Position numbers and translations under genes: made by a program. Shown piece by piece: positions 2,632 to 34,145 of a DNA stretch of 64,000 nucleotides (positions are counted from its first letter, which is position 1; the number at the start of each line of letters is the position of its first letter). Location of the stretch: assembly GCA_963924565.1 (NCBI GenBank), contig OZ004614.1, positions 8,308,001 to 8,372,000 of the forward strand, read 5' to 3'. The notes beneath the pieces were generated by a model that was not told the origin of the DNA, did not search any database, and saw only the letters and a program-made list of their open reading frames with translations. This DNA is from Ascidiella aspersa. Lineage: Eukaryota.

Positions 2632-2704
2632 ATGATAAGCCTTGCGATGAATGAAATGATAGCTTGTTTAATATTCCTCGTAGTTTTGTGCTTCGGACAA
2701 ACAG
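2632..2704 (+). CDS. Leader exon of paralogue 1, signal peptide MISLAMNEMIACLIFLVVLCFGQT(G)
   Basis: Hydrophobic core, phase-1 donor ACAG|GTTAGT matching the phase-1 acceptor at 7834; TATA box about 100 nt upstream; homologous exon at 37068-37140. Confidence 0.75.
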
Positions 2705-5700: not shown

Positions 5701-8700
5701 TTTTAAGTGTATGGAATGGATTAGTCCATTGGTTCTAAAACATTTGCGAAAATTGTTACGTGGCAGACTCGCTTGCAGTTATTTTAATTATTCGCGTTTC
5801 GTTGGAATAAATATAACTTGACAAAAGAAAAGCGTCAAATAAATACGTGTAAAAAAGAATAAAAGCGACATATTTTGCTTTAGTTTGTTAAGGGTTCATT
5901 TTATTTTATTTATTTCATTTACCTATTTTGGGTTAGGTTTGCGACTAAAAGCTTTACATTCGCAGACCCCTAAAATTTTCACGAACAATAATAATTTTTT
6001 TGGTTTTTTAATAAATAAAATGGCGAAAAAAGCACAAGGAAAACAAAACAAAGAAAAGCTTTCAGGCAGCTAACGACCATTTAAGGAAGTTCGCACAGAA
6101 GATAACATCGCGAAAAAGCGTAACATAGTCGGGCACTTTCGGCATATTTGCATTGATAAATTACATCTCTTGCACATAAATAGCCACATATCAAAAATGT
6201 TTTGCACGGTTCATCTTTGTGCACTCCGAAGAGTAATTGCTCGGGGGAAAAATACACGGGAATTTTTTTGTCGCATCTAGCACAGTCTGGAGGCACAAAA
6301 GTTCATGAACACTTGTTTTTACAAACGTTGTTTGTTTATAAAACAATAAAATATCTAGTTAGGTACTGTCCACAGTCCACACCAAAGTTGAGAGTATTGG
6401 ATTCGGCATTACGCGGTAAAATGATTATAGTTAAGTACCATTTTATTTTGTAAACCAGTGGATATTCTCGGGGTTTTCTATGATACAGAACGTTGCAAAC
6501 ATAAAAAATGTAAAATTTACTCGGTTATTGTTCTATATTTTATGGTCATTTTTTAGTCAAAGAGATCGCATTGAAATTGCAAGAAAATACTTCGATATTT
6601 TGTAGCGATATTAAATTGGAAGTTTTCTGTTGGTCATCATAACGCTTAAGATTTAGTACTTTACCAAAAAGTACTTTACCCAAATAGTTTGAGGTAATGT
6701 AAATAGCATCTTTCTTTGCAATATTTATATTAGTTTGAAGCCATACTCATACTATTTGGTTCAAAGTGAAAAAAACGAAATTTCGCGGACTCAACGTTAG
6801 AACCCGATTAACTTGTGAATTGGTATTAATTATAGTGTAATGTCACTTTTTGGTAGATCGGACAACATAACGCGATTTTTTGTATTAACAGAGTAAAGTT
6901 GGCAAAAAAATATAGGTTGGGTACCTTGGCCTGGCGACCCCCTACCCTGGTGACCCCTTTTTAATTTGTGATAATGTTTTTACAAGAACAGACTACTCCA
7001 CGTACTCTGGCCTGGCAAAAATTATTCACACGTTTATCCATTATATTTGACCGTTATTTAACTAATTATAAAATGAGGCTCGCGAGTGGAAAAGTTTGCC
7101 AAGCCCTGATTGGTCTGTCATTTAACTATTATACGCCTACAATCACTTCTACTATTATTAACAGTTATGTATGATCACGCAATACACAAGCAAGTCCGCA
7201 CTGATTAAAATATAAAGCTATTATCTGAAAAATGTTTATCACATCTTGTGGGAACCCATTGATAGGTTGCGCGGCCAATGCGTGGTCGATTTGCAGGTCG
7301 GCTTCATCAAACCTACAGTATAAACATATTGAAACTGTAACAGAACATTTATTCCTGTTAATTCGAGTTTACGCATAAAACATCATTCTTTGTACTGTTT
7401 ATCCCAGTTTTAAACCATACAAATGATGATTTTTTAAACGTTGTTTTTTAATAGTTTAATGGTAAACGTTAAAGTTAAACCCGATATGATCGGTCATTTT
7501 AAAATTCCACCTTACAAAATAATTTTTAAGATTTTTTTGTCATCTTCGTATCTCTTAAAAAATGTCCAAAATCATATAAAAACAATTTTTGCATATTGCG
7601 GTCTCATGAGTAATAAAAGACGCACCTCTATGCGTATAACACGCTCAACTTGTGTGAAGCTTTTATCTGGGCATTAGTTATTTCAACAATATTCTCAATA
7701 GCGCGAACAGGTTCGCTAATTAAATTTTACTTGGGCAATTTAAGGAAAAATAAGTTGAAAATTAGAATACCAATTCAGAATAACTCTATGACAATGGTTA
7801 GGTAAGGTCCGTAACAAACATTTCGTTTTCAAGGTTCAACAACATGCTTGGGAAGGAACTTCGTACTTTCAAGCCACAAGGTAAATCAAGCAACTGCCAA
7901 GTCAGCTTGCATTGCTGGAGGCGGAGGTGGTAACTTGGCAAGTATTCCTGACGAAGCAACACAAAAGCACCTCAGCACTCTCGCAAGTAGCAAGGTTGGA
8001 AACGGGTGGACTGGAGGTAGCCATGTTTGTAAGTAAAATAAGTGAAACTGTGTTTTCAAATGAACAAGGTAATTGTGTATTAGTAGTATATATTAGTAAT
8101 AAATAAATATTTATCAGATGCTTTCATCGGCGGAGAGCGTACTGGAAACAATTTTAATTGGCCTGACGGAACTATATTCTCAACCTTCTCATCAGGCGCG
8201 TTTGTTTTATGGTTTGTATTTAGAAAAGTTTTATGTTCGGTTTACATTTTGAACCTCCCCAACAAATCCTTATACGCTTATGCAACGCGCTTTATTACTA
8301 TTTAACAATTTTAATTCGACCCATATGAATTGTATTTCGTTAATGGAATATTTAATAAGTATAATTTTGCATTTGAAACTATTCTTGACACAAATAAATT
8401 TAGAACGTTTTTAAGCAATTTAAATGTAGAACAATAATAATAACAAATTAGCTACTTATATCAATTATTAGGTTTTTGGTATGTCAACATATAGTTATTT
8501 GTTTCCGGTCGCAACCGCTCTACGACTTAATGAGTAAACAGTTGCATTACATACCGTTGTTTGAAAGTAGGAAGCACCTGGTCTACACCCGGATACAACG
8601 GATGGTTAATGTCAGGTAATCCTTCAGGCTTTGGCCAATGTATGGTGTTTACTGGAACACGATCCGGCTCAGCAGGCAGCTATACTTACACTTGGAAGTG

Positions 8701-11700
8701 GGGAGATGCATTTTGTACTGGCACATTCTACTACCTATGTGAACATCAGGGTAAATTTTAATGGTTTGATTTGCAGCTTGAAACCTAAATGAAGTATAAT
8801 CCTTTGCATTGAAATTTTGAAATTTTATTGACACTCTTAACAAATGGTATACAGCAACTTTTTTTTCAACTGTGCTTCGTCAGGTCAAATTAGGGATGAA
8901 AATGACGAGAACAAGCAAATAAGCGCTAGTGCGTGACGCTTATGGAAATAGCAAGTTGTAACAGTTCTATTCGATTGCGTTAACTGATACATACCACTGA
9001 AATGTAGTTAGGTCTGTGTGCAACCACAGTTTCTTATACAACTTTTTGTTATACAGTATGATGTGCTATTTAACCCAACTCATGATTTAACTTAGTGTTA
9101 ATAGAATCACATTTCTTTTATGATGTATTGTTTACTACTTTTTTTTTTCATTGCGCACTTGCGTTTCTAAATCGCTTGGTTAATCGAGTTATTCTCACTT
9201 TGACGTGATGGAACTCGGTTGAACAAAAATTTGTCTAAATAAAAATAAACCTTATCTCAAAGGATATCGTATTTTCCCAAAGGATATCAAATTTTTTCTG
9301 TCGAACTAAATAACATTTTGAAACGACCTCACTTTCGATTGTTTAAACGCAGTACCCCTCAACTTAAAAGTGATGTCACCAACCAGCACACCTACATTGG
9401 GAGGCAGTTTGACATTCACAGGAACTATCTCTGACTTTTACAACGAACCTCTTAATGTGGTTGTTGCTCATGGTGGGACGAGTACCAACGTAACAAGCAA
9501 TTTACATGGAACGAGCTTTACTTACGTGATCAACTCTGTCGCATTGTCACATAACGGTGATTTCGTTTTTACTGCGAGCAACAGTGCTGGCACTTGCTCC
9601 GTTGTGGAGACAGTGAAGCTTTTACCTGGTAGGTGATGTTCTGTATAACTTATTTCTATTGTCTAATTTATTATAGATATTCTACGTGAAATGAGCTATG
9701 GCGTCTTTACCTCTTTCTTTTTTCAATAAAAGAAGACGATGATTACTTTAATTAAGAGATGCTCAATTAGAACACAAAACTAGCACTGACAGTAATATGT
9801 CCTCCAGGAATTAAATCGAAAACCTTTGTTATGTTTTTAAATGACAAAAATGGCCTAATTTTGCCTTTCGTCCTCTTTAGTAGGGAAGCTTGCCTTTCTT
9901 CCTCTGTAGTGGGAAAACTATGGGCCAAACAACCTTTCTGGCATGTATGTTTATTTTGACGTTTTATTTTGATTTTTTGCCCTGTCCAGCTTAATTTTGG
10001 TGTGTGACCTCCGCCTAGTTTGACCTTTGAACCTTAGCGTACGCTTTTTGAGTACGCTTTTTAATTTTAAGTACGCTTTTTAATTTCATGACTTATATTT
10101 TGTAAGGTTATTACCATTTATAGCATTGATGGCGTCATAGTCAAAACATTAGTTTTTTCGATTAAAGAAATTAAATAAATGTTGTGTGTGAAAGAGTTTT
10201 AAATGTTCAATTGTGTTTTTTTGTTTCCCTCATGTGTGTCACTAGTTCAATTTTGCCTAAAGAGCTATGGTTGGGTTTTTGCACTTGCCTTGAAAATGTA
10301 AATCCAATTCACTAAGATTTACTAACTGCATATATAGTTATAAGGAACCATAATTTTTGTGTAATATAAACGAAAAGGTTTTTCTGAACAGAAAATTACT
10401 ACAATGTGGACATTTTGAACACACTATAGGATCGCTAAATAGTTTAAAGTATTAGTACGTTAATCGACATGTTTATTTGTGTGGACTGTGGGTGTACGAT
10501 TTACCTATAGCTTATTTAGTACCAAACACATAGAACAGTGTTTCTCAATCTCTTTGAGCGGCGACTCAGATAGCGTAAGTATAACAGCCGCGATTTGGCC
10601 ACCCAATTTTTACTAAGACCTTTGTAAGCGACCTAAACATCATGACAAATAAGTAAATAAGCTAGAAATTAGTTTTACACGAGCCATATTTTCATATTGC
10701 TTCCAACACTGTTTGAAATATAGGCGTAATCTTGCTCAGAACCACTCTCAATAAATTTAACAAAGTAAAACCGAATCAGGAATTTTTTGGGTCACAACCC
10801 AATGGTTTAAAATCACTGATACAGCAAAAGGTTATCCGTAACTCGATAGTAATTACAAAATGATATAATGCCTACTTGTTTTATTACTTTGCCTCCTGGT
10901 TTTTTTAATTTTATCAAAAAATGTTGTTGCTCCAAAAAAAACTCAGTCACCCTAAAATTTAAATTTCCTCATTAGTTAGCCGAGTGGTGGCCCTCTTTAA
11001 GAACCACTGCGTTTAAGGGACATCAGTGACCAAGTGTTGGAACCAAAATCGTTTTAAAAACTCCTCCTTTAAAATAAGCAGTTATGTAAAAAAAACTTCT
11101 TGCTTAAGAATATATACTTTACGCACATAGGTTGTTTTTTGCATAATGTATAGCTATTTTGTGCAATTTATTGTGTTATTTCGGTTCTCCACCGCAGAAT
11201 TTAACGTAAATCTAATTGTTATTATTTTACACATACCTTTACTTCAGTAGTTTCCCAGCGTTTTAATTCTATGCAAAGAGATATTTTATACTTTTTTGAG
11301 ATTTTATGATTTTTGATTCAATAGGCATCAGGAATCAGGAACATACTATAATGGTCAATTCGTACTAATATGCAGCGCAATATATCCGTATATCCGCTAT
11401 TGTGACGTAACACATATAGTTTCGACGGTACTGCTGACACAAGGAAGCAGCTCCAATGTTTAACGATATACATAAAGTTCAGAAGACATCACATGTCGAG
11501 GTATTTCAAACTTGGATGAAATCTATGAGCGTATTATTAAGAAGCAAAACTCGAACGCCAATTATTTGGAAGAAAAGGCTTAAACTGTTAGTATAGTTAC
11601 GGAGATTTAAGAAATTTTAAACAGATAAAATACTTAGGACAGCTCTTGATTTTAGATTTTCGTCTGTTTTATAAAGTGTTTACTGGATAGGGTGTTATTA

Positions 11701-14700
11701 TGAACAATTATGAAACTATGTGTAATTTGAGAAAATCTGAGATTTTTAACGTTGAATTTCAAGAGTAGCAAATTTCTTAGGTTTATTTGTTTTAAGGCGT
11801 CAGTAAAGGTGGCGTAATCGTTGTTTTGTGTTCTGTATCAGGGATGGCGAACCTTTTCATTTCGTAAGTCACAAACAGGACCTTAATCCTTACAAAATGC
11901 ACAAGTGGGTCATATATTTAATTATAAGCTAATTTTATGCGAAACTTTTCTGCTGCGTTGTTTTAATTGTTATTGTCTGGGTTGGTAATTCAAGGTTTTT
12001 AGACGATTTTCAATTCGGATTTCCACAAATATTTAGAACCTAAATAGTAAACAAATGCTACAGCACTTTTTTATGGGATTACAGGAGGTTAGCAAAAATA
12101 CTTACAGCATGGTTTAACCAGGGTCTTCAGAATTTTTAGTCTGCCTTGCTCTTGATTTCCCTGAAAGGATCGCCACCCTTTACATTCCACAGCTGTTTTT
12201 AGTTGTCTGTATTTTTGCACGCATTTGTTATAGTGCAGTTTTGTAGGCCTACTCGTCAACCCTAAAACACTTTTGCAGGACCCACAGATTGGGTAGACCT
12301 GATTTACTGTATATAGTGCTTTTTTTACATTTATCTATTGCTGAAAATGATTGATAACATTTCGGTATTTCTAATCTAGAGAGACACACAAATGGGTCAT
12401 AAAAAATCTGTGGTGGGTCACTTAGTGACCCGCGAGTCAGTGGTTTGACATCCCTGTTCTGTAGGATGCCTAAGTCATAAAATGATAAAAAACTGTTTGA
12501 AAAAGTAAAAAAAGAAAAAAAATATATTAGGCATGCAAATGAAAAAATATTTACAAAAGCAAGTTTAAGCATTTCTAAATTTCCGTTTATTGGACCTAGA
12601 ACCGTATTGTAAGTGGCGGATGAATTGACGTTTTTAAGCGTTGCAAGAAACCCATGAAAAATATTTTAATCCTATTTGATTTGAGAGGACTGGATGTGCA
12701 AGCAAAAAATAAAAACATGACAATTTAAAGTTTAAACTATTTAGCTGGAACCTTAACTCGTGCGAGATAAATGGTTAGAAATGTGCGCAATTAAACTTAT
12801 TTCTAATTTGAAAAAGTGATTGTTAACACCTGTTTGAAGTGATATTGTAAATATATAAATTCATTTTTTAAGCAAAAAAATCGTCATTTTCCAGATAGTG
12901 TAACATAAAAAAGTATTTTTTTTATACATGTAGCAGGGACTTTCATAACAGATATTATGCGTTAGTGTTCCTGATCGTTTAAAAGTGCTATTTATTTACT
13001 ATTTAATTAATTACTCCCTTCTCCGTAATTAATTACTCCCTTCTCCGTAAATATATTAAATCTATAGAAAATATAAGTATCTTATAAAATTATGTTTAGA
13101 TAACAAGCAGTCAGTCCAGACTTGAATTAAATTAATATGGGCTTTCACAACGAATATTATGTGCTGCTTTTAATGTTGGTTTACGTTTTTTCTGATTTAA
13201 TTGCCAGGCTCTTCCGCATTACATCTCACATCGACTATACTGACGTTAAGCATTAACGCAGTGACATCGGTGACATGTACGTGTTCTGGTTATCACCAAC
13301 CTCAATGTAGATGGTTCAGGTGAGGTGGTTTATTGCCCATAAATTAACCTTTGCCGACATATTTAACTTACGGAAAGGTTTTGCAACATGTTTACAAGTC
13401 GCTGGAAAAAAACAACTCAGAAAGGTATCAGCGTGGCGTCATTAATGTTAACTGACAATTATAATCTCAAAATTTGAAACGTGTTGTTTTTCAGCATTTT
13501 ATTTTAACAACTGTTTGCGCCAAATTTTTATGTAATTGAAAATAGGTCTATTTTAGAAAAAAGTTTGCGCGAATCAAGAAAAATGGCCTTTATTTGATTT
13601 AAAATTTGAGTGAACAGAACGTCATACATAATTACTCTAACGGTGCATTAAAATCGCAAGAAAACGCGATAAATAGAATGGTTAAACTAGTTTATGGTAT
13701 ATTTGAATAAGGCTGTTGAATTTTCGTTTGATGTTTGAAAAGACACAATAAATTCTTGCGAAACTTAATAAAAAGCATTTATATATACTACAAGTGGGCA
13801 AAACTTTCTTTTTGATAATTCCAGGGTATGCATGGCACATTTAGGACTAAAAGATTTTTTAAAAACACAACAAACATTTGATGTAAAAAATATTCGTGTT
13901 AAGTGCGAAATGTTTGGCGTTTAAGTTGTTAAAATAATAAAAAGGAGAAATTGCCTCGTGTCTAGTTGTAAAAGAAGTGGCTGGGTAAAAGATGTACTTT
14001 GGCAGGTCATTTAGCCTACATTGGCGGATTTATTTACATTGTTGGATTCGGCCTTTCAATATTTAATTGTTTCATTTGCGACCTAAAAGAGGACTGTTAT
14101 CTCTGTAACAAAAAATGAGTGAAATAATAAATTTTGTAAACAATAAACTTATTATTAGGTTTGTAATAGATATGTTTGAAATGTGATAAACCAGTTTAGC
14201 GTTTTTAATACTTTTATACATTAAAATAAAGACAAAAGTAAACTATTTTATTTCCATATGCTGTTGATTACTTGTTCAAAATCAAAGCGGTGAAAATTAT
14301 ATTCCTAACAAAATGACACCCAAAATCGATTGATGAAAAACCTAACTGAAGCGAACATTTCTTTAAATAAAAAAATATCTTTGTTAAGGAACAACGCTGA
14401 GGTATCTTCAAATTCTTCAACTGCAGTTTACCAAGTAGCAACTACAACAAGCGGAGGATCAACTGGCAATTCTGTTCTTCACATCAGAATCAACCACGAC
14501 GCTGGAAACGGGGGATTGTACGAATGTAGGACGACCAACTGGGCGGGAAGTGGCGTGAAAATCAAGACTTTAACAATCCGTGGTAGGTATAGTTACTTCA
14601 AAGAACATAGCAATTTTTTATATTATTAAACGACATTCTACTTTTTATTCGGACAAATGAATGGCCAATCTAACGTGTAACTAAAAGATTCGCCTTAAAC

Positions 14701-26700: not shown

Positions 26701-29700
26701 CGACAGCACCTCACTCCACGCCAAGCAACCCTGCACCAATTGTAGGAGGGACAGTCGGCTCGATTTTGATCGTCATTATTTTGCTGGGACTGGCCTTCTA
26801 TAACAGGTGAATATTATTGAAGTGACGCGAGCCTGTAAGTGGTCTGCTAGTAGGTCCACGTACAATTTCTTATTGTCTGATGAAAAATTATCAAATAAAA
26901 CTAACATGAGTTACTATTGGCAGGCCATTTTGAATAATAAAACATAACCTAGAACTGCAATTTGTTGTTACCAACTTAAATCCAACGTAAATAAATCAAT
27001 GAAAAGAAATATTGAAAATACCTGAATACTTAAGTTTCTGTAATTGTAAGCCAGTATATTAACTGTATTTTAATCAAGCAATGGAATGTTTTGTCAGAAG
27101 TGCATGTTATCTACCTATATCCTGAACACTGACGGCCTATAAATTAAATAAGGGGGAGGGGGACAAAACCTGGACCGTTTCACTAATTTTTGTGGCCGTT
27201 CACATGTTTAGGAAAAAACAAGTGTTGGCGGCCGTGCGTTGATGAAAACTCGTGTTTACCTAATATAGTTGCATGATTTCGCACGAGTTCGTTAGAGAAC
27301 ACATGTCTTTTTAAGGTTTAATTGTTTAATGACGTTACGGTGTGACTTAAGTTTCTAAAGCCATCTCTGATAAAAGTGCTACTGGCGGCCGTAAGATAAA
27401 TAAAGACTGTCGTCACCAGCTAAAAGGTTGTGCACACCTGAATACAGAATAAAACTTTGTTCGTTACAGAACCGCTCTTCATGGGTTTATTGCGAGAAGA
27501 AAGAAGCGATCCAGTCTTCTACCGCCCATCAGAGGTAACATAAAATGCACTTTTAATGACAATGACAACTCATATCTATATCAGTGTTAACGTTAACGGT
27601 ATAGAATCAGATTTATGCTTTAAAATCTAGGCTGATAATTTAGACTAAAGAAGTGCTGAAGGCATTTTACTTTTTCATGAGTTCTGGTCCAACCACATTT
27701 CATTGGCTCTCATCAATTTGTAGTCTAACTGCTTACGTTTTACAATAAAAACTAAAGAGTTTTTCGATAAAGATTTTATTTGGCATCGTTCAGCGAGAGA
27801 TGTCGGCCTCAACGCCGAAGAAAGTGAGGATGAGGAGAATCCTTACGGGAATGTCGATTTGAATCACGCACCGCAAAATGACGTCACTAGCATACCCATT
27901 GTCAGCCTCGAGGGGAATTACCTTGCCAGTGTGCAAGCAAACCACGCTGAGTGGAATCGGCAATTCGCTGTAAGTTTCGCTATCATACTACGCCCATGAA
28001 AGTAAAACATTTACAAGTTTTGCTGTATTATTATAAGGTATTTAAAAAAATTCAATTATTTTGCGAATGGCCTTTAATGGAAGTTTTAGACAACCTTGAA
28101 ATACTGGAATGATTTTCTACAGGACTGTGTTTATCATGAAATATTATTCTAACAGCTGATCAAAACGTCTACTGTCTCTCTTTTCACCACCGAAGTTGCA
28201 AAAAGAGAAGAAAATGCGAGCCGAAATCGATACAAGAACATCATTCCATGTATGCGTGTTGCTTTTGTTTAAAAAAACGGTATTAAATAACAACGTTTAA
28301 ATGATATTTTCAGACGACAACAACTATGTGCCTCTCCAGGGAACAACATACAATTATATAAATGCTTCGATTATTGAGGTGAGAAATGCGATACAAGAAC
28401 TTGTTCAAGTCAAAGTGAATATGTTTGAACATTGAAATTTATTTTATTTAGTTTTAAAACCACCCTGTTAATTATCACGGACAATTTTTTACCAAACAAA
28501 CACCCCGAAAAAAGTCGGATACATGGAAGTAATTAGATAATGTCTTGTAAATAAAAATCGATTTAAGACGGGGCTACGTGGCTATCAACGTACATTACAA
28601 ATAGGAAATTTTACATAAACTGTTGTATCTTAATTTCTGCTTATTTAGGGCTTTGATAAAACTCCAAAGTGGATTGCCACCCAGGGTCCGAATCATAACA
28701 CAATTGGTGATTTCTGGATGATGATATGGCAACAAAACTCCAGGGTTGTCGTTATGCTCGCTAATCTATTCGAAAAAGGAAAGGTAACTATGAATTACCA
28801 TAATTCCATTTGATTAGAAAAAAAGACTCGAAAAAAAATCAATTAGGGTTTACCACTGTTTAACTAAATGTGAATTCAATTATAAATTGTTACAGTGCAA
28901 GTGCAACCAGTACTGGCCAGAAAAGGGCAAAACTTTGACTCGTGGAAAGATCAACGTAAAAACCGAAGACGTCATCAACAAGGGCTGTTACGTCATCAGA
29001 AAAATGTCGGTCGAACAAGCGAATAACGAATATTCAACAGTAAGTCATTAACTTGTACTATGTAACTATTTCATGAGATATTTATGCTAACAACTCATTA
29101 TATAAGCATTTTTAATTTTCGTAACTTAACTTCCGTTATTCTTCTTCACAGGAGCTTCGAACGATCACCCAGTTCCACTTCACAGCTTGGCCTGACCATG
29201 GCGTCCCAGCCACAACCAGCGGATTGCTGCGACTTTACAATGACGTCAGCAAAATGATGCAAAACCTCGGAGAAAACCAACCAACAGTTGTACATTGCAG
29301 GTTAGACTGATGTTGTTTTTGGCATACACAATTAGTTGCCAAAGTTCTGCTTTACCCTCTTTACAGATATTACCCTCTTTACAGATATTAAATATACTAC
29401 ACCATTGTTTGCTAGGTTGAAATACTTCAGCTTATTAATAATTTACGTTTAAGCTAGGCAAAGCAAGAAAAAAAATTGCCCGTGGTGAGATTCGAACTTA
29501 CGATGCCAGGAACGTTGCTCTAACTACTGAGCTATGGTTGTTAGTAAAATAAGTCGTCAGTCAATTGTCTATCTATATTGGCTAACGTAACACGCAAGCA
29601 CCCATAACCTTCTAAGGCGATACAAAATCCTAACTGCCTTTAATTGTGAAGTTAGCCAATTAGTTTTTGTTGCTCTTCCAGTGCCGGAGCGGGAAGAACA

Positions 29701-32700
29701 GGGACCTTCATCGGACTCGATTACTTGCTGGAGGAGATGAAGACGAGATCAAGCATCGACGTCTACCAAGCTGTCATGCATATGAGGGAACAGAGGATGG
29801 AGATGGTTCAGACTGTGGTAAGGTGGAATAAAATTGTTTGCAAATTGTCTGGAGAGTGTGCACTATATTGAAAAGAAAAATAGAAATGTTACACACTTTT
29901 TAAAGGGATTTAATTAAACACATTCTTTAATCCGACTATTACTAAGAATGCCTCTTTTACGATACTCGGGGACACCAATTTTACGACCTTATATATCGTA
30001 AATAACAATTTAGCGTGAGTTCTAGTTGTTTTTATCTTAGCGCTAATGTTCTGCCTCAGTAAAAATATCTGCCTGGTTCTCAAAAATACCAAGAAACGTA
30101 ATTGCCATTATTAATTATTTACAACAAAAACGAGCTTGCGCATTTCAATAAATTACATATATTTTCGGCTAAACAATGAACAACTAATTAAAGACTTTTA
30201 CATAACAATTTCCCTTATCATAGAATATATCTTCAAAACTGCAGCAATACATAGCGACAAATACCCTAATATTAACTATAACCACAATAAGAAATCCCTA
30301 ACAGTAACTTTGCCATTTCATTAACATAACGAATTCATAATCAAACAATTTTTCCTCATATACACGATAATGGCGTGATCTCACATGCTAGTCATACCAT
30401 AGCGAGGTAAATACCGTGGTAACCGGCGCCTATGAAATGCACAAATGTTTATAACCCATTGGGGTACTGAGTGTGTTAATTTAGTATTCCTTAAGTATAA
30501 TTACTAACGGCTAAAGATGTTGCAAGACCGCAACAGCCTCAAAACAAATACATTGCCAAATTCATAAAAGTATTTATAACTGTCATATTTGTAAATAGCT
30601 TCAATACGTCTTTCTGCACAAGCTACTTTACGAAATTCACGTGCTGGGAAATTCCGACAGCGAAGCTGAAGGTATAATAAGCAAACACATGGAAATGCAA
30701 GGGTAAGATGCGGAAGTATCACAAACTGGTACCTTACAGTATAATACATATTAGGGTTGTTAAAAAAAAAACTCTTTTTTTCCGAATTTCAGTGGGACCC
30801 CTGGAATTGTTAAGTTGCTTCTAAAAAACCCACAAACCAATTCTGACCATGTTTGGTTCAGTATTGGCTGTGCTACGTCAATTTAAAAATTCAGATTTCC
30901 GTTACAATTAAAAAAAAATTATCCTACTCCTATTTTTTTTTACTTTTTTTGCATTGCTTAAAATAGAATAGCAATAAATAAACCTGTTTTACAGTTTAGA
31001 AGTGAGTAGTCTGGTATAAATGTCACATTTCAACAACATGTCTTAGGCAGTTTTATATGAAAAATGTCCTTTTTAGCATGTTTTCATGAACTTGAGAAAA
31101 GTAATTGATATAATTGTGAATACTAAATGCACTTTGATTTGATGCCATGTCTGCTGCATCTTCAATATTTTTGAACTAAAAATATATTTTCATTAGTTGG
31201 TAGAATTTGTTGCCAATGTCATTCTTCGCTATAATCTATAAACCACTGTTGGTTGATCATCAGGCTTAATTAGGCAGCAGAAGGGCAATCTTGGTATAAA
31301 GCCTAAACACCGCGTTAAGGTATATGACATATCATTGTCTTGTCCTTCTGAAGTCGTACGTGTTAACAAATGGCTTGTAATACCGGAAATGCATACAAGC
31401 TTCGAAGGCTATGAAAAAATATGTTTTTTAATCAAGTTCACTGTATTTATTGCGAAACAATTACTAACGGAAGCTGACACTTGTTGGGAATTCTTTTAAA
31501 ACCCACCATACTTGTACTAGGAATCCTCTCAACAACGCAATATCCGTGGAATTCAACAAGCTGAAGTTTATCAAAGACGACCGACCGAAATCTCCAATTA
31601 GAATCAATGATGTGCCACTTATTCACTGTAAGTATGTGCTTGACTTAATTTAAAATTATGTTCATATTTTCAATCTGCTTCCTATTATTTTAAATGTCAA
31701 CGCCTATACAGTATTATATATAGGTATGTGAACTGCGATGTGACGTTACGCATTTAAACAAGGCTTTTAACCTTAACATTGCCCAGGTTCTTAAGAAATT
31801 ACAAGTTTAAGCAGATATTGTTTGTTACAGACAAGCCAAAATCGGACAATTACTCCGCCTACACGGTCGAGGTAAGACATTTCAACCTTGAGATATAAAG
31901 CATAGACTAAAAAACGACCAGAAATTTTTGGATTTATTATTTCAGACTTATGCGAGGGTTGAAGGTGTTATCGTGTCGACCCAACCCAACAAAGACAAGG
32001 CTGAAGACTTTTGGTCAATCACTTTTGAGAGGGAAGTTGGACTCATCGTTGCGCTGGGAAAGGTCTGTATTGTAGCTTGAGAAAAAAAATAAAATTATTC
32101 AACAAATGTAACGCCCAACTAATCCAGAACTCTACTTAACGTCCTGCCAAGTGCCAAGCGCTACAACGCGTGTATTTTACTTGTATTAAAATAAGCGACA
32201 GTAAAATACTAAAACACTGAAACAACGAAAAGCGGCCAACGCCTAAAACGGTGACCTAAACGTTAATTCCCAAGGTTTTCTACAATGAAATGCACTCAAG
32301 CTAGACCCCAAACGCGACTGCCCACATTAGATTTCGCGTACCCATTCACTATAACGAGCGAAAAAAAGGTGTGCGTTTCAAAACATAACTAATTATTGGG
32401 TGCCAACAGAAAACGTGATAAGATAAGAAATAAAGCGTGAAAGGTGAGGTGTAAAAGTGGAAAAGCGATATAATTTATGTGAGTGAGAAAGAAAGAGGAA
32501 AACGAAAACACGCGTACAAACGATAAAACAGAGAAACAATAACACACATAGAAACTATAAATAATCGGTTTACCACACATACATATTATTTGTGAAGCCA
32601 CAAATACATATTACAAGGGTAAGTCAAGATTTTTGCCATTTATATGATAGTATTGGTGACACTTAAAAGTTTATGCCCTTTTACAGCTTAAAATGTCATA

Positions 32701-34145
32701 CTCTTTTAAGTTTTAAGGGCGAGAAAAAAACTTATATTTTTAAACATGGAAAGCTATATATATAGTTTGTGTGACTCTTATTAACAGAATATAACACTAA
32801 ACCCTTCTGAATGAAGAAATTGGTCACGTTCGCAATATTTTGTCATATTTATACTCTTAGCTTGATTCTCATCATTGGCCTCAACCGCCCAACACCAACC
32901 AGGAATTCGGAGACATCGTTGTGAGCAAGATATCTGAATGTGTTGAAAAATCAGTGATCCAAACACGTTTCACCGTGGAGAGCAAGCAACGTGGAATCAA
33001 GGCAAGTATCGCACTGTTAATGTTTCAAGATTCAAACTCTATTTAAAGTTAAAGTTCTTTTTATTCCTTTATTCAAAATAAAAAAACATTTAGCTCACAA
33101 AATCAATTGTTAATTAGTGCCCTTTTAATCAATATTTAATTAATATCTTTTAGTACATTTTAATATTGTGTCTATATTTTAACATTAATTCAATGATATA
33201 CATATTCCGCAAGACTTTAGTAATTTTTTTGTTAATGTGATTCTTTCTTGTTTATCGGTATGGAAAAGGAAATGTGTATTAAATACGTTATACAACACCT
33301 ACCACATCTCCAAATGAACTAAGATTAGTTGAAATAAAATAACAATATTTGACACTTAGGTCCCTATAACTCAACTTGAGTTCGACAGTTGGTCGAGCCA
33401 GGGTTTACCAAACGAGGATTTGTTCAATATATTTTCTGTCATCGACTCGCATCTGAAAGGCAACTCAAACAAGAACATGATCTTGCTTGCCAAGTAAGTT
33501 GTTGCTGTATGTCAGTCAAAATTTATTCGTACCAATGCTCGTAAACTATGCACTTGTTGGGTAGTTTGTCCCCTTGGGCTGCAAGCAAATTTCAACGTAA
33601 TCAGTTTGTTTACGGCAAATTGCTTGGTGTGCTTCAAAATATGTCAGCAAATCTGAAAGTTTTAGAAACGCCACCACTTTAGTCGTTTTTTAAACTAATT
33701 CGCAACAAACCCGATGTAGTGCATAAGGGCAATACAACAAATTTTAGTTTAGAATTTCAAACAGCATTATGAAAGTGTGCCTTTTTGTACACTCCGTTAT
33801 TTTATTTGCTGCATTTTTGTGAAACAACGCGATTTAAACTATTGCCATTTTTCGTTTAGACACGATTTCACTCGTCCTGCGATGTTTTGTATTTGCTGGA
33901 ACTTGGTGGCACGTTACAAAGCTGAGATGATGGTGGACGTTTATCGGGCGTTCAAAGACACACAGGACTGTTTGCCGGGAGTTACCTTAGATAAGGTAAA
34001 GCATTGTTTTCTCTATTTGTAATACTGTACAATACATGTGGTTGTAATACATATATTTACCATACAGGCCCACTACGAATGCTGCTATTCACTGATGAAA
34101 TCCTACATCGATTCATTTTCAAGCTACGCTAATTTCACTAATTGA
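2632..34145 (+). CDS. Receptor-type protein tyrosine phosphatase, paralogue 1 (SP-CTLD-7xIg-CTLD-like-FN3-TM-PTP D1-PTP D2); cytoplasmic part PTPRA/PTPRE (R4)-like; 38 exons, 1798 aa
   Basis: Manually spliced exons with all phases compatible and no internal stop: 2632-2704, 7834-8028, 8118-8195, 8571-8750, 9353-9628, 13208-13319, 14389-14582, 15063-15174, 15411-15595, 15745-15862, 22423-22610, 22721-22838, 22903-23093, 23713-23824, 24045-24244, 24433-24726, 24788-24952, 25074-25163, 25328-25548, 25713-25880, 26155-26338, 26686-26806, 27470-27534, 27794-27969, 28156-28249, 28314-28378, 28649-28783, 28896-29039, 29152-29300, 29682-29817, 30599-30702, 31521-31627, 31831-31871, 31946-32062, 32861-33001, 33360-33493, 33860-33995, 34068-34145 (TGA). 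Sum 5397 nt. Three donors are GC. PTP motifs RNRY, YINAS, IATQGP, DFWMMIW, KCNQYWP, WPDHGVP, HCSAGAGRTG, VQTVLQY. Confidence 0.9.
3331..4267. mobile_element. Non-autonomous hAT element
   Basis: Perfect 8-bp TSD CACTAGAG; imperfect TIR CAGACGTGGGTAA / TTACCCACTCCTG; subterminal CGGCCCGCGGGCCG palindrome. Confidence 0.85.
4541..5020. mobile_element. Palindromic (foldback-type) MITE
   Basis: Long imperfect inverted repeats AGGTCTACAACAATTAGGGCATCCAA...AAAAGTCTGACTTTTA vs TAAAAGTCAGACTTTT...TTGGATGCCCTAGTTGTCGTAGACCT. Confidence 0.7.
5023..5468 (+). mobile_element. 3' remnant of a hAT (Buster/Charlie-type) transposon with the transposase dimerisation domain
   Basis: EFWVSL...YQNLSEKAISIL, frameshift, then PTSYLCEQRFLALVEIKTKK, ending QQRSH*; terminal AAAAAGGTTAAGAAGCACCG. 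Confidence 0.8.
5995..6260 (-). mobile_element. Truncated L1/Tx1-type LINE 3' fragment
   Basis: Homologous to about 42634-42895 (FSPEQLLFGVHKDEPCKTF...YQCKY). Confidence 0.7.
7834..8750 (+). CDS. N-terminal C-type lectin domain of paralogue 1 (exons 2-4)
   Basis: AKSACIAGGGGGNLASI...YAFIGG...FNWPDGT...GYNGW...GNPSGFGQC...WKWGDAFC...YYLCE follows the CTLD Cys/Trp pattern. Confidence 0.85.
9353..24726 (+). CDS. Seven Ig-like domains of paralogue 1 (exons 5-16)
   Basis: Repeated C-x-S-x-G-x-P-x-P-x-V-x-W and D/E-x-G-x-Y-x-C-x-A-x-N-type motifs. Ig2-Ig6 are each split into a 112-118 nt and a 185-200 nt exon. Ig1 (9353-9628) and Ig7 (24433-24726) are single exons. Confidence 0.88.
10536..10818. 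mobile_element. Degenerate hAT-type MITE
   Basis: CAGTGTTTCTCAA ... TTTAAAATCACTG termini; TSD not preserved. Confidence 0.55.
11839..12456. mobile_element. hAT MITE (same family as 59837-60390)
   Basis: TIR CAGGGATGGCGAACC / GGTTTGACATCCCTG; TSD TTCTGTAT/TTCTGTAG. Confidence 0.85.
15951..16115 (-). repeat. 3' LTR
   Basis: Direct repeat of 19821-19985, adjacent to the PPT. Confidence 0.95.
16174..19790 (-). pseudogene. Frameshifted gag-pol of the LTR element
   Basis: Gag zinc knuckle CFQCGRRGHYKRAC, protease LDSGA, RT FSKLDANSGFWQ and MDD, RNase H ADASSYGLGAVL...TDHKPL, integrase PWQKVGCDLF...SDNGPQF...PQSNGEA; broken into about 9 ORF pieces. Confidence 0.93.
19821..19985 (-). repeat. 5' LTR
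   Basis: Direct repeat of 15951-16115, adjacent to the PBS at 19802-19820. Confidence 0.95.
24788..26338 (+). CDS. Second compact CTLD-like domain (24788-25163), FN3 domain (from 25328) and membrane-proximal region of paralogue 1
   Basis: YYNYNNGLLNYNSASKYCSDHGGELP...TWVQG...C...SCSESHAFIC is CTLD-like; SIDVKW...YVI...TATIRNLASEQNYTVAL is an FN3 pattern. Confidence 0.7.
26686..26806 (+). CDS. Stalk and transmembrane exon of paralogue 1
   Basis: APATVTTAPHSTPSNPAP-IVGGTVGSILIVIILLGLAFY-NR; the next exon carries basic RRKKR. Confidence 0.88.
28156..30702 (+). CDS. Membrane-proximal PTP domain D1, catalytic motifs intact
   Basis: NASRNRYKNIIPYD, YINAS, WIATQGP, DFWMMIW, KCNQYWP, WPDHGVP, VVHCSAGAGRTG (HCS codon split by intron 29301-29681), MVQTVLQYVF. 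Confidence 0.95.
29478..29540 (-). mobile_element. tRNA-derived SINE head or tRNA relic
   Basis: Minus strand TAGCTCAGTAGTTAGAGC...GTTCGAATCTC followed by a T run; anticodon arm missing. Confidence 0.55.
29956..30535 (-). repeat. Unclassified interspersed repeat, inverted copy of 58653-59236
   Basis: About 580 bp of reverse-complement similarity; one end is the hairpin TGTTGCGGTCTTGCAACA. Confidence 0.8.
31521..34145 (+). CDS. Membrane-distal PTP domain D2 (pseudophosphatase) and C-terminal YANF tail
   Basis: EFNKL, EDFWS, HHWP, VDVYRA recognisable; intron phases parallel D1 and a 136-nt exon occurs in both; WPD is WSS and HCSAGxGR is LAKHDFTR; ends SYIDSFSSYANFTN*. Confidence 0.85.

What the first reader, a model, noticed from the sequence alone, without database searches (positions are those of the whole stretch)
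7834..34145. Unusual RPTP architecture: CTLD-Ig(7)-CTLD-FN3 ectodomain on a PTPRA/PTPRE-type cytoplasmic module
Seen: the domain order above and the C-terminus SYIDSFSSYANFTN. Known: the PTP-alpha/epsilon (R4) tail ends in a very similar DYANFK motif, but vertebrate R4 enzymes have only short glycosylated ectodomains, and none of the vertebrate R1-R8 subtypes has a C-type lectin domain. Inference: exon shuffling gave an R4-like phosphatase a lectin/Ig antenna of about 1150 aa. I cannot confirm that this architecture is undescribed.
Basis: partly seen in the sequence, partly recalled or inferred. Interest (0 to 1): 0.75.

Follow-up and report, generated by a model that had tools for sequence, protein, structure and literature searches.

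The report
Sea-squirt lectin-Ig receptor tyrosine phosphatase
This is an intact 37-exon gene for a cell-surface tyrosine phosphatase whose outer part is built of lectin-like and antibody-like modules; many such genes exist in sea squirts and are predicted in public databases, but I found no paper describing them.

Summary
On the + strand, 37 open exons (2647-34142) link with compatible splice phases into 5331 coding bases. They give signal peptide, CTLD, seven Ig-like modules, a compact CTLD-like module, FN3, stalk, membrane helix, an active-looking PTP domain D1, a dead D2, and the tail SYIDSFSSYANFTN. The second CTLD and the FN3 have only weak support.

The tail matches only PTP-alpha/epsilon among solved structures. 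However, Y-x-N-F tails are common on invertebrate tandem RPTPs with large ectodomains. In trees, the D1 exons fall in an ascidian-only clade, outside the clade of vertebrate PTPRA/PTPRE, amphioxus and a Phallusia Sushi/ricin RPTP. A sister relationship to that clade is not rejected (AU p 0.50).

The architecture is not unique. 12 of the 120 best database relatives of a Phallusia family member carry Lectin_C plus PTP domains, and all 12 are ascidian (Ciona, Styela, Phallusia). The gene sits in a tandem array of at least seven units. Their ectodomains diverge (52-88% between two copies) while the phosphatase exons stay 77-100% alike.

RNA evidence for one transcript is inconclusive. This scan already reported the same family on other DNA of this genome. 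Nine paper searches found no description.

The parts
2647..2704 (+). Candidate exon 1: start codon plus hydrophobic signal peptide, phase-1 donor
   Evidence: ATG, 19 codons with a hydrophobic core, donor CAG|GTTAGT. Its phase fits the acceptor at 7834. It is 68% identical to a leader at 37083-37139 upstream of the paralogue, inside an 87% identical DNA block. No signal-peptide predictor was available, and no RNA evidence exists.
7834..8750 (+). CTLD1 in three exons (7834-8028, 8118-8195, 8571-8750). The intron after 8195 has a GC donor.
   Evidence: Pfam Lectin_C below cut-off on exons 2 and 4, collinear. The ascidian-CTLD HMM ranks exons 4, 2 and 3 first of 37. Exon 2 is 46-51% identical to CTLDs of Ciona intestinalis LOC100183702. 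The paralogue has GT where A has GC.
9353..9628 (+). Ig1, single exon, Ig-like without the usual cysteine pair
   Evidence: Pfam Ig_3 E 0.0094. A profile of 27 genomic copies hits titin I-set domains, E 2.4e-5. There are 46 matches in the own genome.
13208..14582 (+). Ig2 in two exons (13208-13319, 14389-14582); absent from the tandem paralogue
   Evidence: Pfam Ig_2 E 0.074 on the second half, none on the first half. Phases 1-2-1. No match in gene B.
15063..15595 (+). Ig3 in two exons (15063-15174, 15411-15595)
   Evidence: Pfam Ig_3 E 0.017 and I-set E 0.01; phases 1-2-1.
15745..22610 (+). Ig4 in two exons (15745-15862, 22423-22610), split by a 6.5 kb intron that holds an LTR retroelement
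   Evidence: Pfam Ig_3 E 0.0024 (first half). Second half: I-set E 6.6e-5, and 'ig' 22.4 bits, over its 21.8 cut-off. Retroelement.
22721..23093 (+). Ig5 in two exons (22721-22838, 22903-23093)
   Evidence: I-set E 9.4e-4 on the second half, none on the first half; phases 1-2-1.
23713..24244 (+). Ig6 in two exons (23713-23824, 24045-24244)
   Evidence: Weak Ig-family hits, E 0.016-0.061; phases 1-2-1.
24433..24726 (+). Ig7, single exon
   Evidence: Ig_3 E 0.012, I-set E 0.024. A tblastn match to the Ig that precedes the lectin domain of Phallusia P0137/P0151.
24788..25163 (+). CTLD2-like compact module in two exons (24788-24973, 25074-25163)
   Evidence: No Pfam or PDB hit. Ascidian-CTLD HMM E 0.0013 and 0.025, at profile positions 3-22 and 101-115. 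hhalign probability 62% and 11%. Four cysteines kept in 13 of 13 genomic copies. It is about 92 residues long, so the long-loop region is missing.
25328..25880 (+). FN3 (25328-25548, continued in 25713-25880)
   Evidence: Pfam fn3 21.1 bits (cut-off 25) on the open frame; E 0.0032 on the exact exon. 85-90% identical in two neighbouring genes.
26155..26338 (+). Membrane-proximal stalk exon with no recognised domain
   Evidence: No Pfam hit. Conserved at 75-87% in two neighbouring genes.
26686..26806 (+). Transmembrane exon
   Evidence: A Pro/Thr/Ser-rich stretch is followed by about 21 hydrophobic residues. If the next intron is retained, a stop codon follows at 26808-26810.
27798..27969 (+). 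Juxtamembrane exon (acidic stretch, start of D1)
   Evidence: 98-100% identical in two neighbouring genes. A few RNA reads lie here.
28156..30702 (+). PTP domain D1 in seven exons (28156-28249, 28314-28378, 28649-28783, 28896-29039, 29152-29300, 29682-29817, 30599-30702). All catalytic motifs are present.
   Evidence: Pfam Y_phosphatase E 6.7e-16, 2.4e-6, 1.3e-11 and 3.9e-14 on four frames. NRY, WPDHG, VHCSAGAGRTG and QYVF were read directly. All RPTP classes are hit in the PDB.
31521..33995 (+). PTP-like domain D2 in six exons (31521-31627, 31831-31871, 31946-32062, 32861-33001 with GC donor, 33360-33493, 33860-33995). Catalytically dead.
   Evidence: Pfam Y_phosphatase only 16.8 bits on 31892-32077. 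WSS stands in place of WPD, and there is no His-Cys in the P-loop position. The same state is seen in gene B.
34068..34142 (+). Last exon: end of D2, the tail ...YIDSFSSYANFTN, and the stop codon
   Evidence: The only PDB matches are PTP-alpha and PTP-epsilon D2 C-termini (5 of 5, best E 2.7e-4). There are 12 copies in the own genome, all on the same contig.
48522..64000 (+). Tandem paralogue (gene B): the same exon order minus Ig2. It runs off the window and continues through TM, D1, D2 and the tail.
   Evidence: Continuation in L044 (G000:C8:8372001-8381000).

Best explanation
Gene A (2647-34142, + strand) is one intact gene for a type-I membrane receptor protein tyrosine phosphatase. It belongs to an ascidian-specific, strongly expanded family whose members combine CTLD, Ig, FN3 (and in other species EGF) modules with a conserved tandem phosphatase module.

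Shown here:
- 37 open exons with compatible phases.
- A catalytically complete D1.
- A D2 that has lost its nucleophile and its general acid.
- An alpha/epsilon-like C-terminal tail.
- Co-duplication of ectodomain and phosphatase exons as one unit.
- Much faster divergence of the ectodomain than of the phosphatase part.

Inferred from established RPTP biology:
- The ectodomain binds an extracellular ligand. CTLD1 lacks the canonical Ca2+/sugar motifs, so this is not classical mannose/galactose binding.
- Ligand-driven clustering or segregation controls access of D1 to phosphotyrosine substrates.
- D2 acts as a regulatory or docking pseudophosphatase.
- The terminal Y-A-N-F tyrosine, once phosphorylated, is a pY-x-N docking site for Grb2-type or Src-type SH2 domains, as at the equivalent tyrosine of PTP-alpha.

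The modules were assembled and varied by phase-1 exon shuffling and by tandem gene duplication.
For: Exon chain: 37 of 37 exons are open and 36 of 36 junctions are phase-compatible, with 34 GT and 2 GC donors.

D1: four exons are over the Pfam cut-off and the catalytic motifs were read directly. D2 is dead. The tail matches only PTP-alpha/epsilon.

Single unit:
- In the array at C8 8.25-8.49 Mb, 7 of 7 Ig1 exons are each followed, in the same orientation and within 14-25 kb, by PTP exon matches and a tail exon.
- Gene B and the upstream neighbour keep the exons collinear. Gene B matched 35 of the 37, lacking the two of Ig2. In the 10-kb stretch fetched for the upstream neighbour, exons 14-34 matched in order.
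- Relatives in other ascidians are recorded as single proteins with Ig, Lectin_C and two PTP domains: Phallusia CAB3265293 of 1468 aa, Styela XP_077975591 of 1990 aa and XP_077966184 of 2096 aa, and Ciona LOC100183702.

Family placement:
- The window's PTP exons score best against ascidian proteins.
- 4 of 4 D1 exons, placed as separate rows, fall in the ascidian clade (99*).
- The P-loop HCSAGAGRT occurs in 13 of 22 ascidian rows and 0 of 28 other rows.

Divergence contrast: A against B is 52-88% identical in ectodomain exons and 77-100% (mostly 93-100%) in cytoplasmic exons.

Shuffling: 11 of 11 module boundaries are phase 1, and B lacks Ig2.
Against: No transcript evidence links the ectodomain to the phosphatase. 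In about 6% of one RNA run, 14 reads were laid, all 95-99% alike. They lie only on 27700-28099 and 28500-29299 (cytoplasmic exons) and on an intronic stretch at 29900-30299, which I take for another transcript. There were 0 reads on 24300-27699 and no joints were listed. The PTP exons are 93-100% identical among array members, so these reads may come from paralogues.

Exon 3 has a GC donor where the paralogue has GT. A retroelement sits in intron 10. The signal-peptide exon is a candidate only. CTLD2 and FN3 are below curated thresholds. No ligand, substrate or activity was tested.
Confidence: 0.8

Rival explanations
1. One reading: the gene is the (or an) ascidian orthologue of vertebrate R4 (PTPRA/PTPRE) that acquired a lectin/Ig ectodomain by exon shuffling.
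For: The tail exon matches only PTP-alpha/epsilon in the PDB. The best non-ascidian hits of the Phallusia family member's D1-D2 are vertebrate PTPRA, about 424 bits against about 390 for LAR-type and 387 for PTPRC. The per-exon sum for the window's D1 puts vertebrate PTPRA (260-272) above R2A (222-241) and PTPRC (221-225). The AU test does not reject the ascidian clade plus the R4 clade as one group (p 0.498). NCBI's automatic names for relatives are 'epsilon-like'.
Against: In the D1 tree the R4 clade (vertebrate PTPRA/E, 6 amphioxus rows, Phallusia Sushi/ricin P0241) has 98/95* support and excludes the 21-row ascidian clade (100/99*). The D1+D2 tree shows the same, and P0241 is sister to vertebrate R4 at 97* (quick method). 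Window D1 exons fall in the ascidian clade. Y-x-N-F tails occur in 33 of 155 sampled proteins, including Nematostella 'Lar' and amphioxus fibrinogen/Ig/FN3 RPTPs. A paper on R3 RPTPs reports C-terminal YxN sites in R3 enzymes too (PMC5336234, passages). D2 lacks the Cys that vertebrate PTPRA/E rows keep.
Confidence: 0.15
2. The locus yields separate products: a tail-less membrane-anchored lectin/Ig protein ending after the TM exon, and/or a phosphatase transcript from an internal promoter, rather than (or besides) the full-length receptor.
For: RNA reads were seen only on cytoplasmic exons (and an intronic stretch at 29900-30299) and none on 24300-27699. Retaining the intron after the TM exon gives a stop three codons on. 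In the 24.0-24.56 Mb cluster there are about 19 Ig1 copies but only 4 PTP and 4 CTLD2 matches, so tail-less relatives exist. Earlier notes s1-801601 and s1-793895 say the same.
Against: Only 14 reads were laid, none 99% or more alike, and paralogues share 93-100% of these exons. I did not look for a start codon or promoter in front of exon 23. The juxtamembrane exon begins in phase 2, continuing the TM exon. Ecto and PTP parts are co-duplicated in 7 of 7 array units. Relatives elsewhere are modelled or cloned as full-length receptors.
Confidence: 0.12
3. Gene A is a recently disabled copy (a pseudogene in the making), and its intact neighbours carry the function.
For: GT has changed to GC at the exon-3 donor compared with gene B. 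A 4 kb LTR element with 96% identical LTRs lies in intron 10. No RNA reads lie on the ectodomain exons sampled.
Against: 37 of 37 exons are open with all phases intact over 5331 nt. GC-AG introns are a known functional minority, and a second one (AAG|GCAAGT after 33001) has a near-ideal context. The retroelement is intronic and on the opposite strand. D1 motifs are intact, and cytoplasmic exons are 88-100% identical to the upstream neighbour.
Confidence: 0.08

Closest known systems
Predicted or cDNA-derived ascidian RPTPs with Lectin_C + Ig (+EGF, FN3) + two PTP domains: Phallusia mammillata CAB3265293/CAB3265290, Ciona intestinalis LOC100183702, Styela clava XP_077975591, XP_077966184, LOC120336013 and others
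   Same: They use the same building blocks and the same order of parts (ectodomain, TM, active D1, D2). They share the D1 clade and often the P-loop HCSAGAGRT. They have a Y-x-N-F/V-type tail. Some also lack a D2 P-loop match (P0177, P0216).
   Different: Number and order of modules differ: up to 4 lectin domains plus EGF in Styela, one Ig plus one lectin in Phallusia. Ectodomain sequence similarity to the window is almost nil, with only 5 of 281 proteins giving any tblastn hit. Most Styela and Phallusia members keep a Cys in D2. I found them only as database records with automatic names, not in papers.
Vertebrate R4 RPTPs (PTPRA, PTPRE)
   Same: Tandem D1-D2. The end of D2 and the tail align: YEcCY..YIDsFSsYANF against [21 protein letters not shown]. 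They are the best vertebrate match.
   Different: R4 ectodomains are short and module-free (recalled, standard classification), against about 1170 residues here. R4 D2 keeps the catalytic Cys. D1 does not group inside the R4 clade.
R2A / LAR-type RPTPs (Ig + FN3 ectodomain, tandem PTP)
   Same: Ig modules followed by FN3, a single TM helix, an active D1 and a largely inactive D2.
   Different: LAR-type enzymes have no CTLD. The window's D1 exons score lower against R2A (222-241) than against ascidian (up to 298) or PTPRA rows. R2A forms its own clade (100/99*).
Invertebrate 'R4-like tail' RPTPs with other ectodomains: amphioxus fibrinogen+Ig+FN3 'PTPRA' (CAH1242919), ascidian Sushi+ricin RPTP (Phallusia P0241), Nematostella 'Lar' XP_032243017
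   Same: A tandem PTP module ending in Y-x-N-F is joined to a large shuffled ectodomain, some with lectin-type domains (fibrinogen-like, ricin B).
   Different: They use different lectin folds, and their D1 lies in the R4/amphioxus or cnidarian groups, not the ascidian clade.
Inhibitory lectin-like and Ig-like immune receptors that recruit SHP-1/2 through ITIMs (NK-cell receptors); a functional analogy only
   Same: A variable lectin/Ig ectodomain is encoded in tandem arrays and coupled to tyrosine-phosphatase signalling, with tail-less relatives alongside (earlier notes).
   Different: Here the phosphatase is part of the receptor chain. No ITIM/ITAM, adaptor pairing, expression in blood cells or ligand was examined.

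Membership tests
Classical (class I Cys-based) protein tyrosine phosphatase, Pfam PF00102 | Match to the Y_phosphatase profile over the curated cut-off | tested here: met
   Four D1 exon frames score 27.8-59.1 bits against a cut-off of 20.9. Two short D1 frames gave no hit.
Classical (class I Cys-based) protein tyrosine phosphatase, Pfam PF00102 | Catalytic motifs in D1: pTyr loop (N-R-Y), WPD loop, HC(X5)R P-loop, Q loop | tested here: met
   Read directly from the exon translations: RNRYKN, WPDHGVP, VVHC|SAGAGRTG across one junction, and QYVF. The motif definitions are recalled.
Receptor-type PTP (type-I membrane protein) | Transmembrane helix between ectodomain and D1 | tested here: met
   About 21 hydrophobic residues in exon 26686-26806, followed by basic and acidic juxtamembrane residues. 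This was judged by eye; no TM predictor was available.
Receptor-type PTP (type-I membrane protein) | N-terminal signal peptide | tested here: inconclusive
   A candidate exon at 2647-2704 has a fitting phase and a conserved counterpart upstream of gene B. There is no predictor result and no RNA.
Receptor-type PTP (type-I membrane protein) | Ectodomain and phosphatase in one transcript | tested here: inconclusive
   14 reads, none on the ectodomain exons sampled, and no joints. Indirect support comes from co-duplication and from relatives.
R4 subtype (PTPRA/PTPRE) | Short ectodomain without recognisable modules | tested here: not met
   About 1170 residues with CTLD, Ig and FN3 modules.
R4 subtype (PTPRA/PTPRE) | C-terminal ...Y-A-N-F tail after D2 | tested here: met
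   5 of 5 PDB hits of the last exon are PTP-alpha/epsilon D2 ends. The feature is not exclusive to R4.
R4 subtype (PTPRA/PTPRE) | D2 retains the HC(X5)R motif | tested here: not met
   7 of 7 vertebrate R4 rows have two P-loop matches. The window's D2 has Leu-Ala at the His-Cys position and WSS for WPD.
R4 subtype (PTPRA/PTPRE) | D1 groups with PTPRA/PTPRE in a tree | tested here: not met
   The R4 clade (98/95*) excludes the ascidian clade. 4 of 4 window exons are placed in the ascidian clade. A sister relationship is not rejected (p-AU 0.498).
Ascidian lectin/Ig RPTP clade (database records only) | D1 inside the ascidian-only clade | tested here: met
   (99* for the set of 21 ascidian rows plus 4 window exons). 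The top 8 of 50 rows by per-exon score are all ascidian. Single exons were used, not a joined D1.
Ascidian lectin/Ig RPTP clade (database records only) | CTLD and Ig modules on the same chain as the tandem PTP | tested here: met
   The phase-compatible chain. The relatives were confirmed by Pfam.
C-type lectin-like domain (PF00059) | Profile match and four-cysteine framework (CTLD1) | tested here: met
   Collinear hits on three exons with an ascidian-CTLD HMM (E 3.1e-6, 2.2e-5, 6.3e-4 among 37 peptides). Pfam hits are below cut-off on two exons: 13.1 and 15.2 bits against 22.6 for a whole domain.
C-type lectin-like domain (PF00059) | Ca2+/carbohydrate site motifs (EPN or QPD, and WND; recalled) | tested here: not met
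   By my own eye alignment, exon 4 reads G-N-P and W-G-D at the corresponding places. Classical sugar binding is therefore not implied.
C-type lectin-like domain (PF00059) | Profile match for the second module (CTLD2) | tested here: inconclusive
   No Pfam or PDB hit. There are weak collinear matches and conserved cysteines in 13 of 13 copies. Folding the two exons together was left out.
Immunoglobulin-like domains | Ig-family profile match in each of seven modules | tested here: met
   10 of 12 Ig exon frames gave Ig-family hits at E 6.6e-5 to 0.074, one of them over a cut-off. The Ig1 profile hits titin Ig.
Fibronectin type III | fn3 profile match over the cut-off | tested here: inconclusive
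   21.1 bits against 25; 18.1 bits on the exact exon.
Paired activating/inhibitory immune receptors | Near-identical ectodomains with opposite signalling tails, adaptor-binding TM residue, immune-cell expression | not tested
   Only the copy counts hint at tail-less relatives. Earlier notes s1-801601 and s1-793895 raise the idea.

The most novel reading that the evidence does not exclude
Ascidians run a germline-diversified recognition system in which dozens of tandemly arrayed lectin/Ig receptors carry their own tyrosine phosphatase. This would be a built-in counterpart of the ITIM-SHP inhibitory receptors of vertebrate NK and myeloid cells. Fast-evolving ectodomains would read self, non-self or microbial ligands. 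A homogenised D1/pseudo-D2/pYxN module would deliver the signal, and tail-less copies would act as decoys or activating partners. Gene A would be one allele-rich member of that system.
Probability: 0.15. Interest if true: 0.8.

Novelty: new variant of a known kind. Interest (0 to 1): 0.45.

Why it matters
Receptor tyrosine phosphatases are classified from vertebrate genes, and none of those subtypes is described with a C-type lectin domain. This gene shows that, in the closest invertebrate relatives of vertebrates, the tandem phosphatase module was combined by exon shuffling with lectin and Ig modules. It was then multiplied into large tandem arrays whose outer parts diverge while the signalling part is kept nearly identical. 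That is the pattern expected of recognition receptors. It gives a concrete, testable candidate family for ascidian innate or allorecognition signalling.

It also corrects an easy misreading. An alpha/epsilon-like tail and automatic 'epsilon-like' names do not make these genes R4 orthologues. For this single gene the result is more modest: it is a well-formed member of a family that sequence databases already hold.

Tried and rejected
RNA test of the single-transcript claim. One RNA run of the same species label was found. 14 reads were laid in about 6% of the run, with no joints, so the result is inconclusive.

Search for a near-identical public protein. The D1 exon 29125-29307 was searched against 1.84 billion representatives. 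It gave 1919 hits at E<=0.001, but the best was only 48-59% identical, so this species' own proteins are not represented closely.

Ectodomain homology. Only 1 of 150 proteins, then 5 of 281, give any tblastn hit on ectodomain exons. The exact CTLD-Ig7-CTLD-FN3 order could therefore not be matched to any outside protein.

PDB ranking of single D1 exons. It gives no R4 preference. Single-domain chains of PTPRG/K/T, SHP2/PTPRB and PTPRE-D2 lead in turn. Tandem chains rank first only because two stretches add up. I rejected this as a classifier.

A GT-AG pair fits on its 5' side, but no acceptor of the next exon fits its phase. The long form of exon 30599-30702 is conserved in two neighbours, so I dropped it.

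Structure check of Ig1 with an alignment of 27 copies.

Literature. Nine searches were run. None returned a paper describing lectin-bearing RPTPs in tunicates.
- One table row in Zelensky and Gready 2004 (PMC514892; passages seen) lists 'PTP-GMC1' among Fugu CTLD-containing gene models, without further text.
- 'PTPRLec' (my uncertain recollection of sea-urchin gene names) gave 0 papers.
- The sea-urchin phosphatase survey by Byrum et al. 2006 is not held, so I saw nothing of it. It may describe lectin-bearing RPTPs in echinoderms.
- PMC5336234 (passages) deals with R3 only. PMC2542381 and PMC10980280 (passages) were irrelevant.
- I did not ask for supplementary files. Sequence lists in supplements of RPTP surveys could name such genes.

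Species identity. Run and organism names are coded.

Full report
WHAT IS THERE

The window is AT-rich animal DNA (GC 0.32-0.43) without gaps. It is G000:C8:8308001-8372000 of a 308.6 Mb assembly in 75 contigs. On the + strand, stop-free frames carrying recognisable protein modules follow one another from about 7.8 kb to 34.1 kb.

I worked out a splice chain by coordinates and phases only. It has 37 exons from 2647 to 34142 and 5331 coding bases (1776 codons). No exon contains a stop, and all 36 junctions are phase-compatible. 34 introns are GT-AG and two are GC-AG (donors after 8195 and 33001). At the first GC donor the tandem paralogue has GT.

The stop codon ends at 34142.

Every search, profile comparison and tree placement used single exons, and natural proteins of other ascidians served as full-length proxies.

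MODULES

Exon 1 (2647-2704) is a candidate signal peptide. It has an ATG, a hydrophobic core and a phase-1 donor. A 68% identical counterpart lies upstream of the paralogue, inside an 87% identical DNA block.

CTLD1 (three exons, 7834-8750):
- Pfam Lectin_C is below the cut-off on exon 2 (profile 3-45) and exon 4 (profile 68-106).
- With an HMM I built from 34 lectin domains of 19 ascidian and other proteins, exons 4, 2 and 3 are the three best of all 37 exon peptides and cover the profile in order.
- By my own eye alignment, the canonical Ca2+/sugar motifs (recalled: EPN or QPD, and WND) are replaced. I therefore read a CTLD fold, not a classical lectin activity.

Seven Ig-like modules follow:
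- Ig1 and Ig7 are single exons. Ig2 to Ig6 are each split by a phase-2 intron.
- 10 of the 12 Ig exon frames gave weak Ig-family hits, E 6.6e-5 to 0.074. Two frames gave none.
- A profile of 27 genomic copies of Ig1 hits titin I-set domains at E 2.4e-5.

CTLD2 (24788-25163) is the weakest module:
- There is no Pfam hit and no PDB hit at E<=10.
- Its two exons rank 4th and 5th of 37 with the ascidian-CTLD HMM, at the two ends of the profile.
- hhalign of 13-copy alignments gives probability 62% and 11% at those same ends.
- Four cysteines are kept in 13 of 13 copies.
- At about 92 residues it would be a compact CTLD without the long-loop region.

FN3 scores 21.1 bits against a cut-off of 25. 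A stalk exon has no hit. The next exon carries a hydrophobic helix of about 21 residues.

D1 is complete. Four exon frames are over the Pfam cut-off (E 2.4e-6 to 6.7e-16). The N-R-Y, WPD, HC(X5)R and Q-loop motifs are all readable.

D2 is dead. It has WSS for WPD and no His-Cys at the P-loop position, though the Arg is kept. Gene B shows the same state.

ONE GENE OR TWO?

Direct evidence is lacking. One RNA run of the same species label was available. In about 6% of it, 14 reads were laid, all 95-99% alike. They lie on 27700-28099 and 28500-29299 (cytoplasmic exons) and on an intronic stretch at 29900-30299, which I take for another transcript. None lie on 24300-27699, and no joint reached the listing threshold. 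The cytoplasmic exons are 93-100% identical among neighbouring genes, so these reads need not come from gene A.

Indirect evidence for a single unit is good:
- In the array at C8 8.25-8.49 Mb, each of 7 Ig1 exons is followed, in the same orientation and within 14-25 kb, by PTP exon matches and by a tail exon.
- Gene B starts in the window and continues beyond it through CTLD2, FN3, TM, D1, D2 and the tail, in the same order.
- The upstream neighbour shows the same order for exons 14-34 in the 10-kb stretch fetched.
- The juxtamembrane exon continues the TM exon in phase 2.
- Relatives in other ascidians are on record as single proteins (see below).

If the intron after the TM exon is retained, a stop follows three codons later. 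The 24.0-24.56 Mb cluster has about 19 Ig1 copies but only 4 PTP and 4 CTLD2 matches. Tail-less products therefore remain a live possibility.

RELATIVES AND ARCHITECTURE

The D1 exon 29125-29307 found 1919 proteins at E<=0.001 among 1.84 billion representatives. The best 150 are at most 59% identical. The window's PTP exons, taken together, score best against ascidian proteins. These are Phallusia mammillata 'RPTP epsilon' records, Styela clava 'epsilon-like' and uncharacterised proteins, and a Ciona savignyi protein.

Pfam architectures of these relatives:
- Phallusia CAB3265293 (1468 aa): Ig + Lectin_C + two PTP domains.
- Styela XP_077975591 (1990 aa): four Lectin_C stretches + EGF + Ig + fn3 + two PTP domains.
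- Styela XP_077966184 (2096 aa): EGF + three Lectin_C stretches + Ig + two PTP domains.

A word-index search with the Phallusia protein's cytoplasmic part listed the 120 best rows of 7979 scored. 12 rows carry PF00059 together with PF00102, and all 12 are ascidian: 1 Phallusia, 2 Ciona intestinalis LOC100183702 isoforms and 9 Styela. 8 of the 12 also carry Ig families.

So the lectin + Ig + tandem-PTP architecture is already in public databases for other ascidians. The exact CTLD-Ig7-CTLD-FN3 arrangement was not found outside this genome, because the ectodomains are too diverged. Only 5 of 281 fetched proteins give any tblastn hit on ectodomain exons.

IS THE CYTOPLASMIC MODULE R4?

For:
- The last exon's only PDB matches, 5 of 5 at E<=10, are the D2 ends of PTP-alpha and PTP-epsilon.
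- The best non-ascidian hits of the Phallusia proxy are vertebrate PTPRA, about 424 bits against about 390 for LAR-type.
- Summed per-exon scores of the window's D1 put PTPRA (260-272) above R2A (222-241) and PTPRC (221-225), but below eight ascidian rows (276-298).

Against:
- In a D1 tree (49 rows, IQ-TREE C20), 21 ascidian rows form one clade (100/99*). These are all 12 lectin-bearing proteins and 9 of 10 other ascidian RPTPs.
- Vertebrate PTPRA/E, six amphioxus proteins and the Phallusia Sushi/ricin RPTP form another clade (98/95*). The relation between the big clades is unresolved.
- The D1+D2 tree (47 rows, quick method) agrees, and puts the Phallusia Sushi/ricin protein as sister to vertebrate R4 (97*).
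- Four window D1 exons, entered as four separate rows, all fall inside the ascidian clade (99*).
- An AU test does not reject ascidian clade plus R4 clade as one group (p 0.498). A sister relationship is therefore allowed but not shown, and the long ascidian stem (0.5-0.6) warns of branch artefacts.
- The tail is not diagnostic. 33 of 155 sampled proteins end in Y-x-N-F (one of them looks like a chance match). They include a Nematostella 'Lar' with Ig and FN3 modules and amphioxus proteins with fibrinogen, Ig, FN3 or TSP1 modules.
- A paper on R3 enzymes reports C-terminal YxN sites there too (PMC5336234, passages).
- Subtypes R2B, R3, R5, R7 and R8 were not in my trees.

EVOLUTIONARY PATTERN

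All 11 boundaries between ectodomain modules are phase 1. Gene B lacks the two Ig2 exons and so has six Ig modules.

Identities to gene A:

| Exons compared | Gene B | Upstream neighbour |
|---|---|---|
| Ectodomain and TM | 52-88% (exons 2-22) | 58-92% (exons 14-22) |
| Cytoplasmic | 77-100%, mostly 93-100% (exons 23-37) | 88-100% (exons 23-34) |

The contrast fits either diversifying ectodomains, or a phosphatase module homogenised by gene conversion, or both. I did not test which.

Own-genome counts:
- At least 156 PTP-profile exon matches. This is a lower bound: 491 candidates, of which 150 were scored. Large clusters lie on contig C6.
- 46 Ig1 matches, 41 of them on C8.
- 13 CTLD2 matches.
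- 12 tail-exon matches.

MECHANISM (inferred)

This is a type-I receptor. Its ligand-binding ectodomain controls, by clustering or exclusion, the access of an active D1 to substrates. D2 is a pseudophosphatase for regulation or docking. The terminal tyrosine in Y-A-N-F would be a pY-x-N site for Grb2/Src-type SH2 domains, as known for PTP-alpha (recalled). None of this was assayed.

NOVELTY

This is a variant of a known kind. RPTPs are modular, and invertebrate chordates attach many ectodomains to tandem PTP modules. CTLD-bearing RPTPs are absent from the vertebrate subtype scheme (recalled). They were not found in nine literature searches. They do exist as database predictions.

One table row in PMC514892 lists a Fugu CTLD-containing model named PTP-GMC1. 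The sea-urchin phosphatase survey could not be read.

Earlier follow-ups of this scan (s1-801601, s1-793895) had already described this family, with tail-less copies, on other pieces of the same genome. My copy counts agree with them in part.

LIMITS

- No joined protein was analysed.
- RNA sampling was thin.
- The signal peptide and the TM helix were judged by eye.
- The species is not identified.

Noticed in passing
window 15950-19985 (minus strand), inside the intron between exons 15745-15862 and 22423-22610: LTR retroelement. Direct repeats of at least 166 nt at 15950-16115 and 19820-19985 are 96% alike. Integrase core, RNase H and two reverse-transcriptase pieces lie in separate open frames between them, so the copy looks decayed by frame breaks. 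Observed only.
   Followed up: partly
window 48522-64000, continuing in L044 (G000:C8:8372001-8381000): The tandem paralogue (gene B) keeps the whole exon order of gene A but has no match to the two Ig2 exons, giving six Ig modules instead of seven. Its D2 is dead in the same way.
   Followed up: partly
G000:C8 8.24-8.49 Mb, 9.9-10.2 Mb, 19.97-20.0 Mb, 22.65-22.83 Mb, 24.0-24.56 Mb, 25.19-25.30 Mb: 46 copies of the Ig1 exon, 41 of them on this contig. Only 13 copies of the CTLD2 exon and 12 of the tail exon. The 24 Mb cluster has about 19 Ig1 copies but 4 PTP matches, which suggests many tail-less relatives.
   Followed up: partly
G000:C6 28.0-32.6 Mb and 7.22-7.32 Mb: Dozens of further PTP-domain exon matches lie in dense clusters on another contig. 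Genome-wide there are at least 156 matches from 491 candidates, far more than a usual animal PTP complement. Their ectodomains were not looked at.
   Followed up: no
window 1-7800 against 35400-45340: The regions upstream of genes A and B share repeated blocks of 0.07-1.2 kb at 68-88% identity. These include leader-like exons at 2647, 37083 and 40604 that encode similar hydrophobic signal peptides.
   Followed up: partly
window 8195/8196 and 33001/33002: Two GC-AG introns in one gene. The first is GT in the paralogue. The second has a near-consensus AAG|GCAAGT context.
   Followed up: partly
window 26806-26810: Right after the donor of the transmembrane exon the reading frame hits TGA. Intron retention would therefore give a membrane-anchored protein with a three-residue tail.
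   Followed up: no
window 29900-30299: RNA reads with the first mate on the + strand (depth up to 3) and loose ends at 30185 and 30268 lie in the intron after exon 29682-29817. DNA contig depth there is also 5-10 times that of the flanks, which suggests a transcribed repeat.
   Followed up: no
proteins P0241, P0252, P0028, P0245 (Phallusia, Ciona-type and Styela records, and a Logan contig): Ascidian RPTPs with about 12 Sushi repeats; three of the four (not the Styela P0245) also carry a ricin-B lectin and a WxxW domain. The Phallusia one groups with vertebrate PTPRA/PTPRE and may be the true ascidian R4 orthologue, while the Styela one falls in the ascidian clade.
   Followed up: partly
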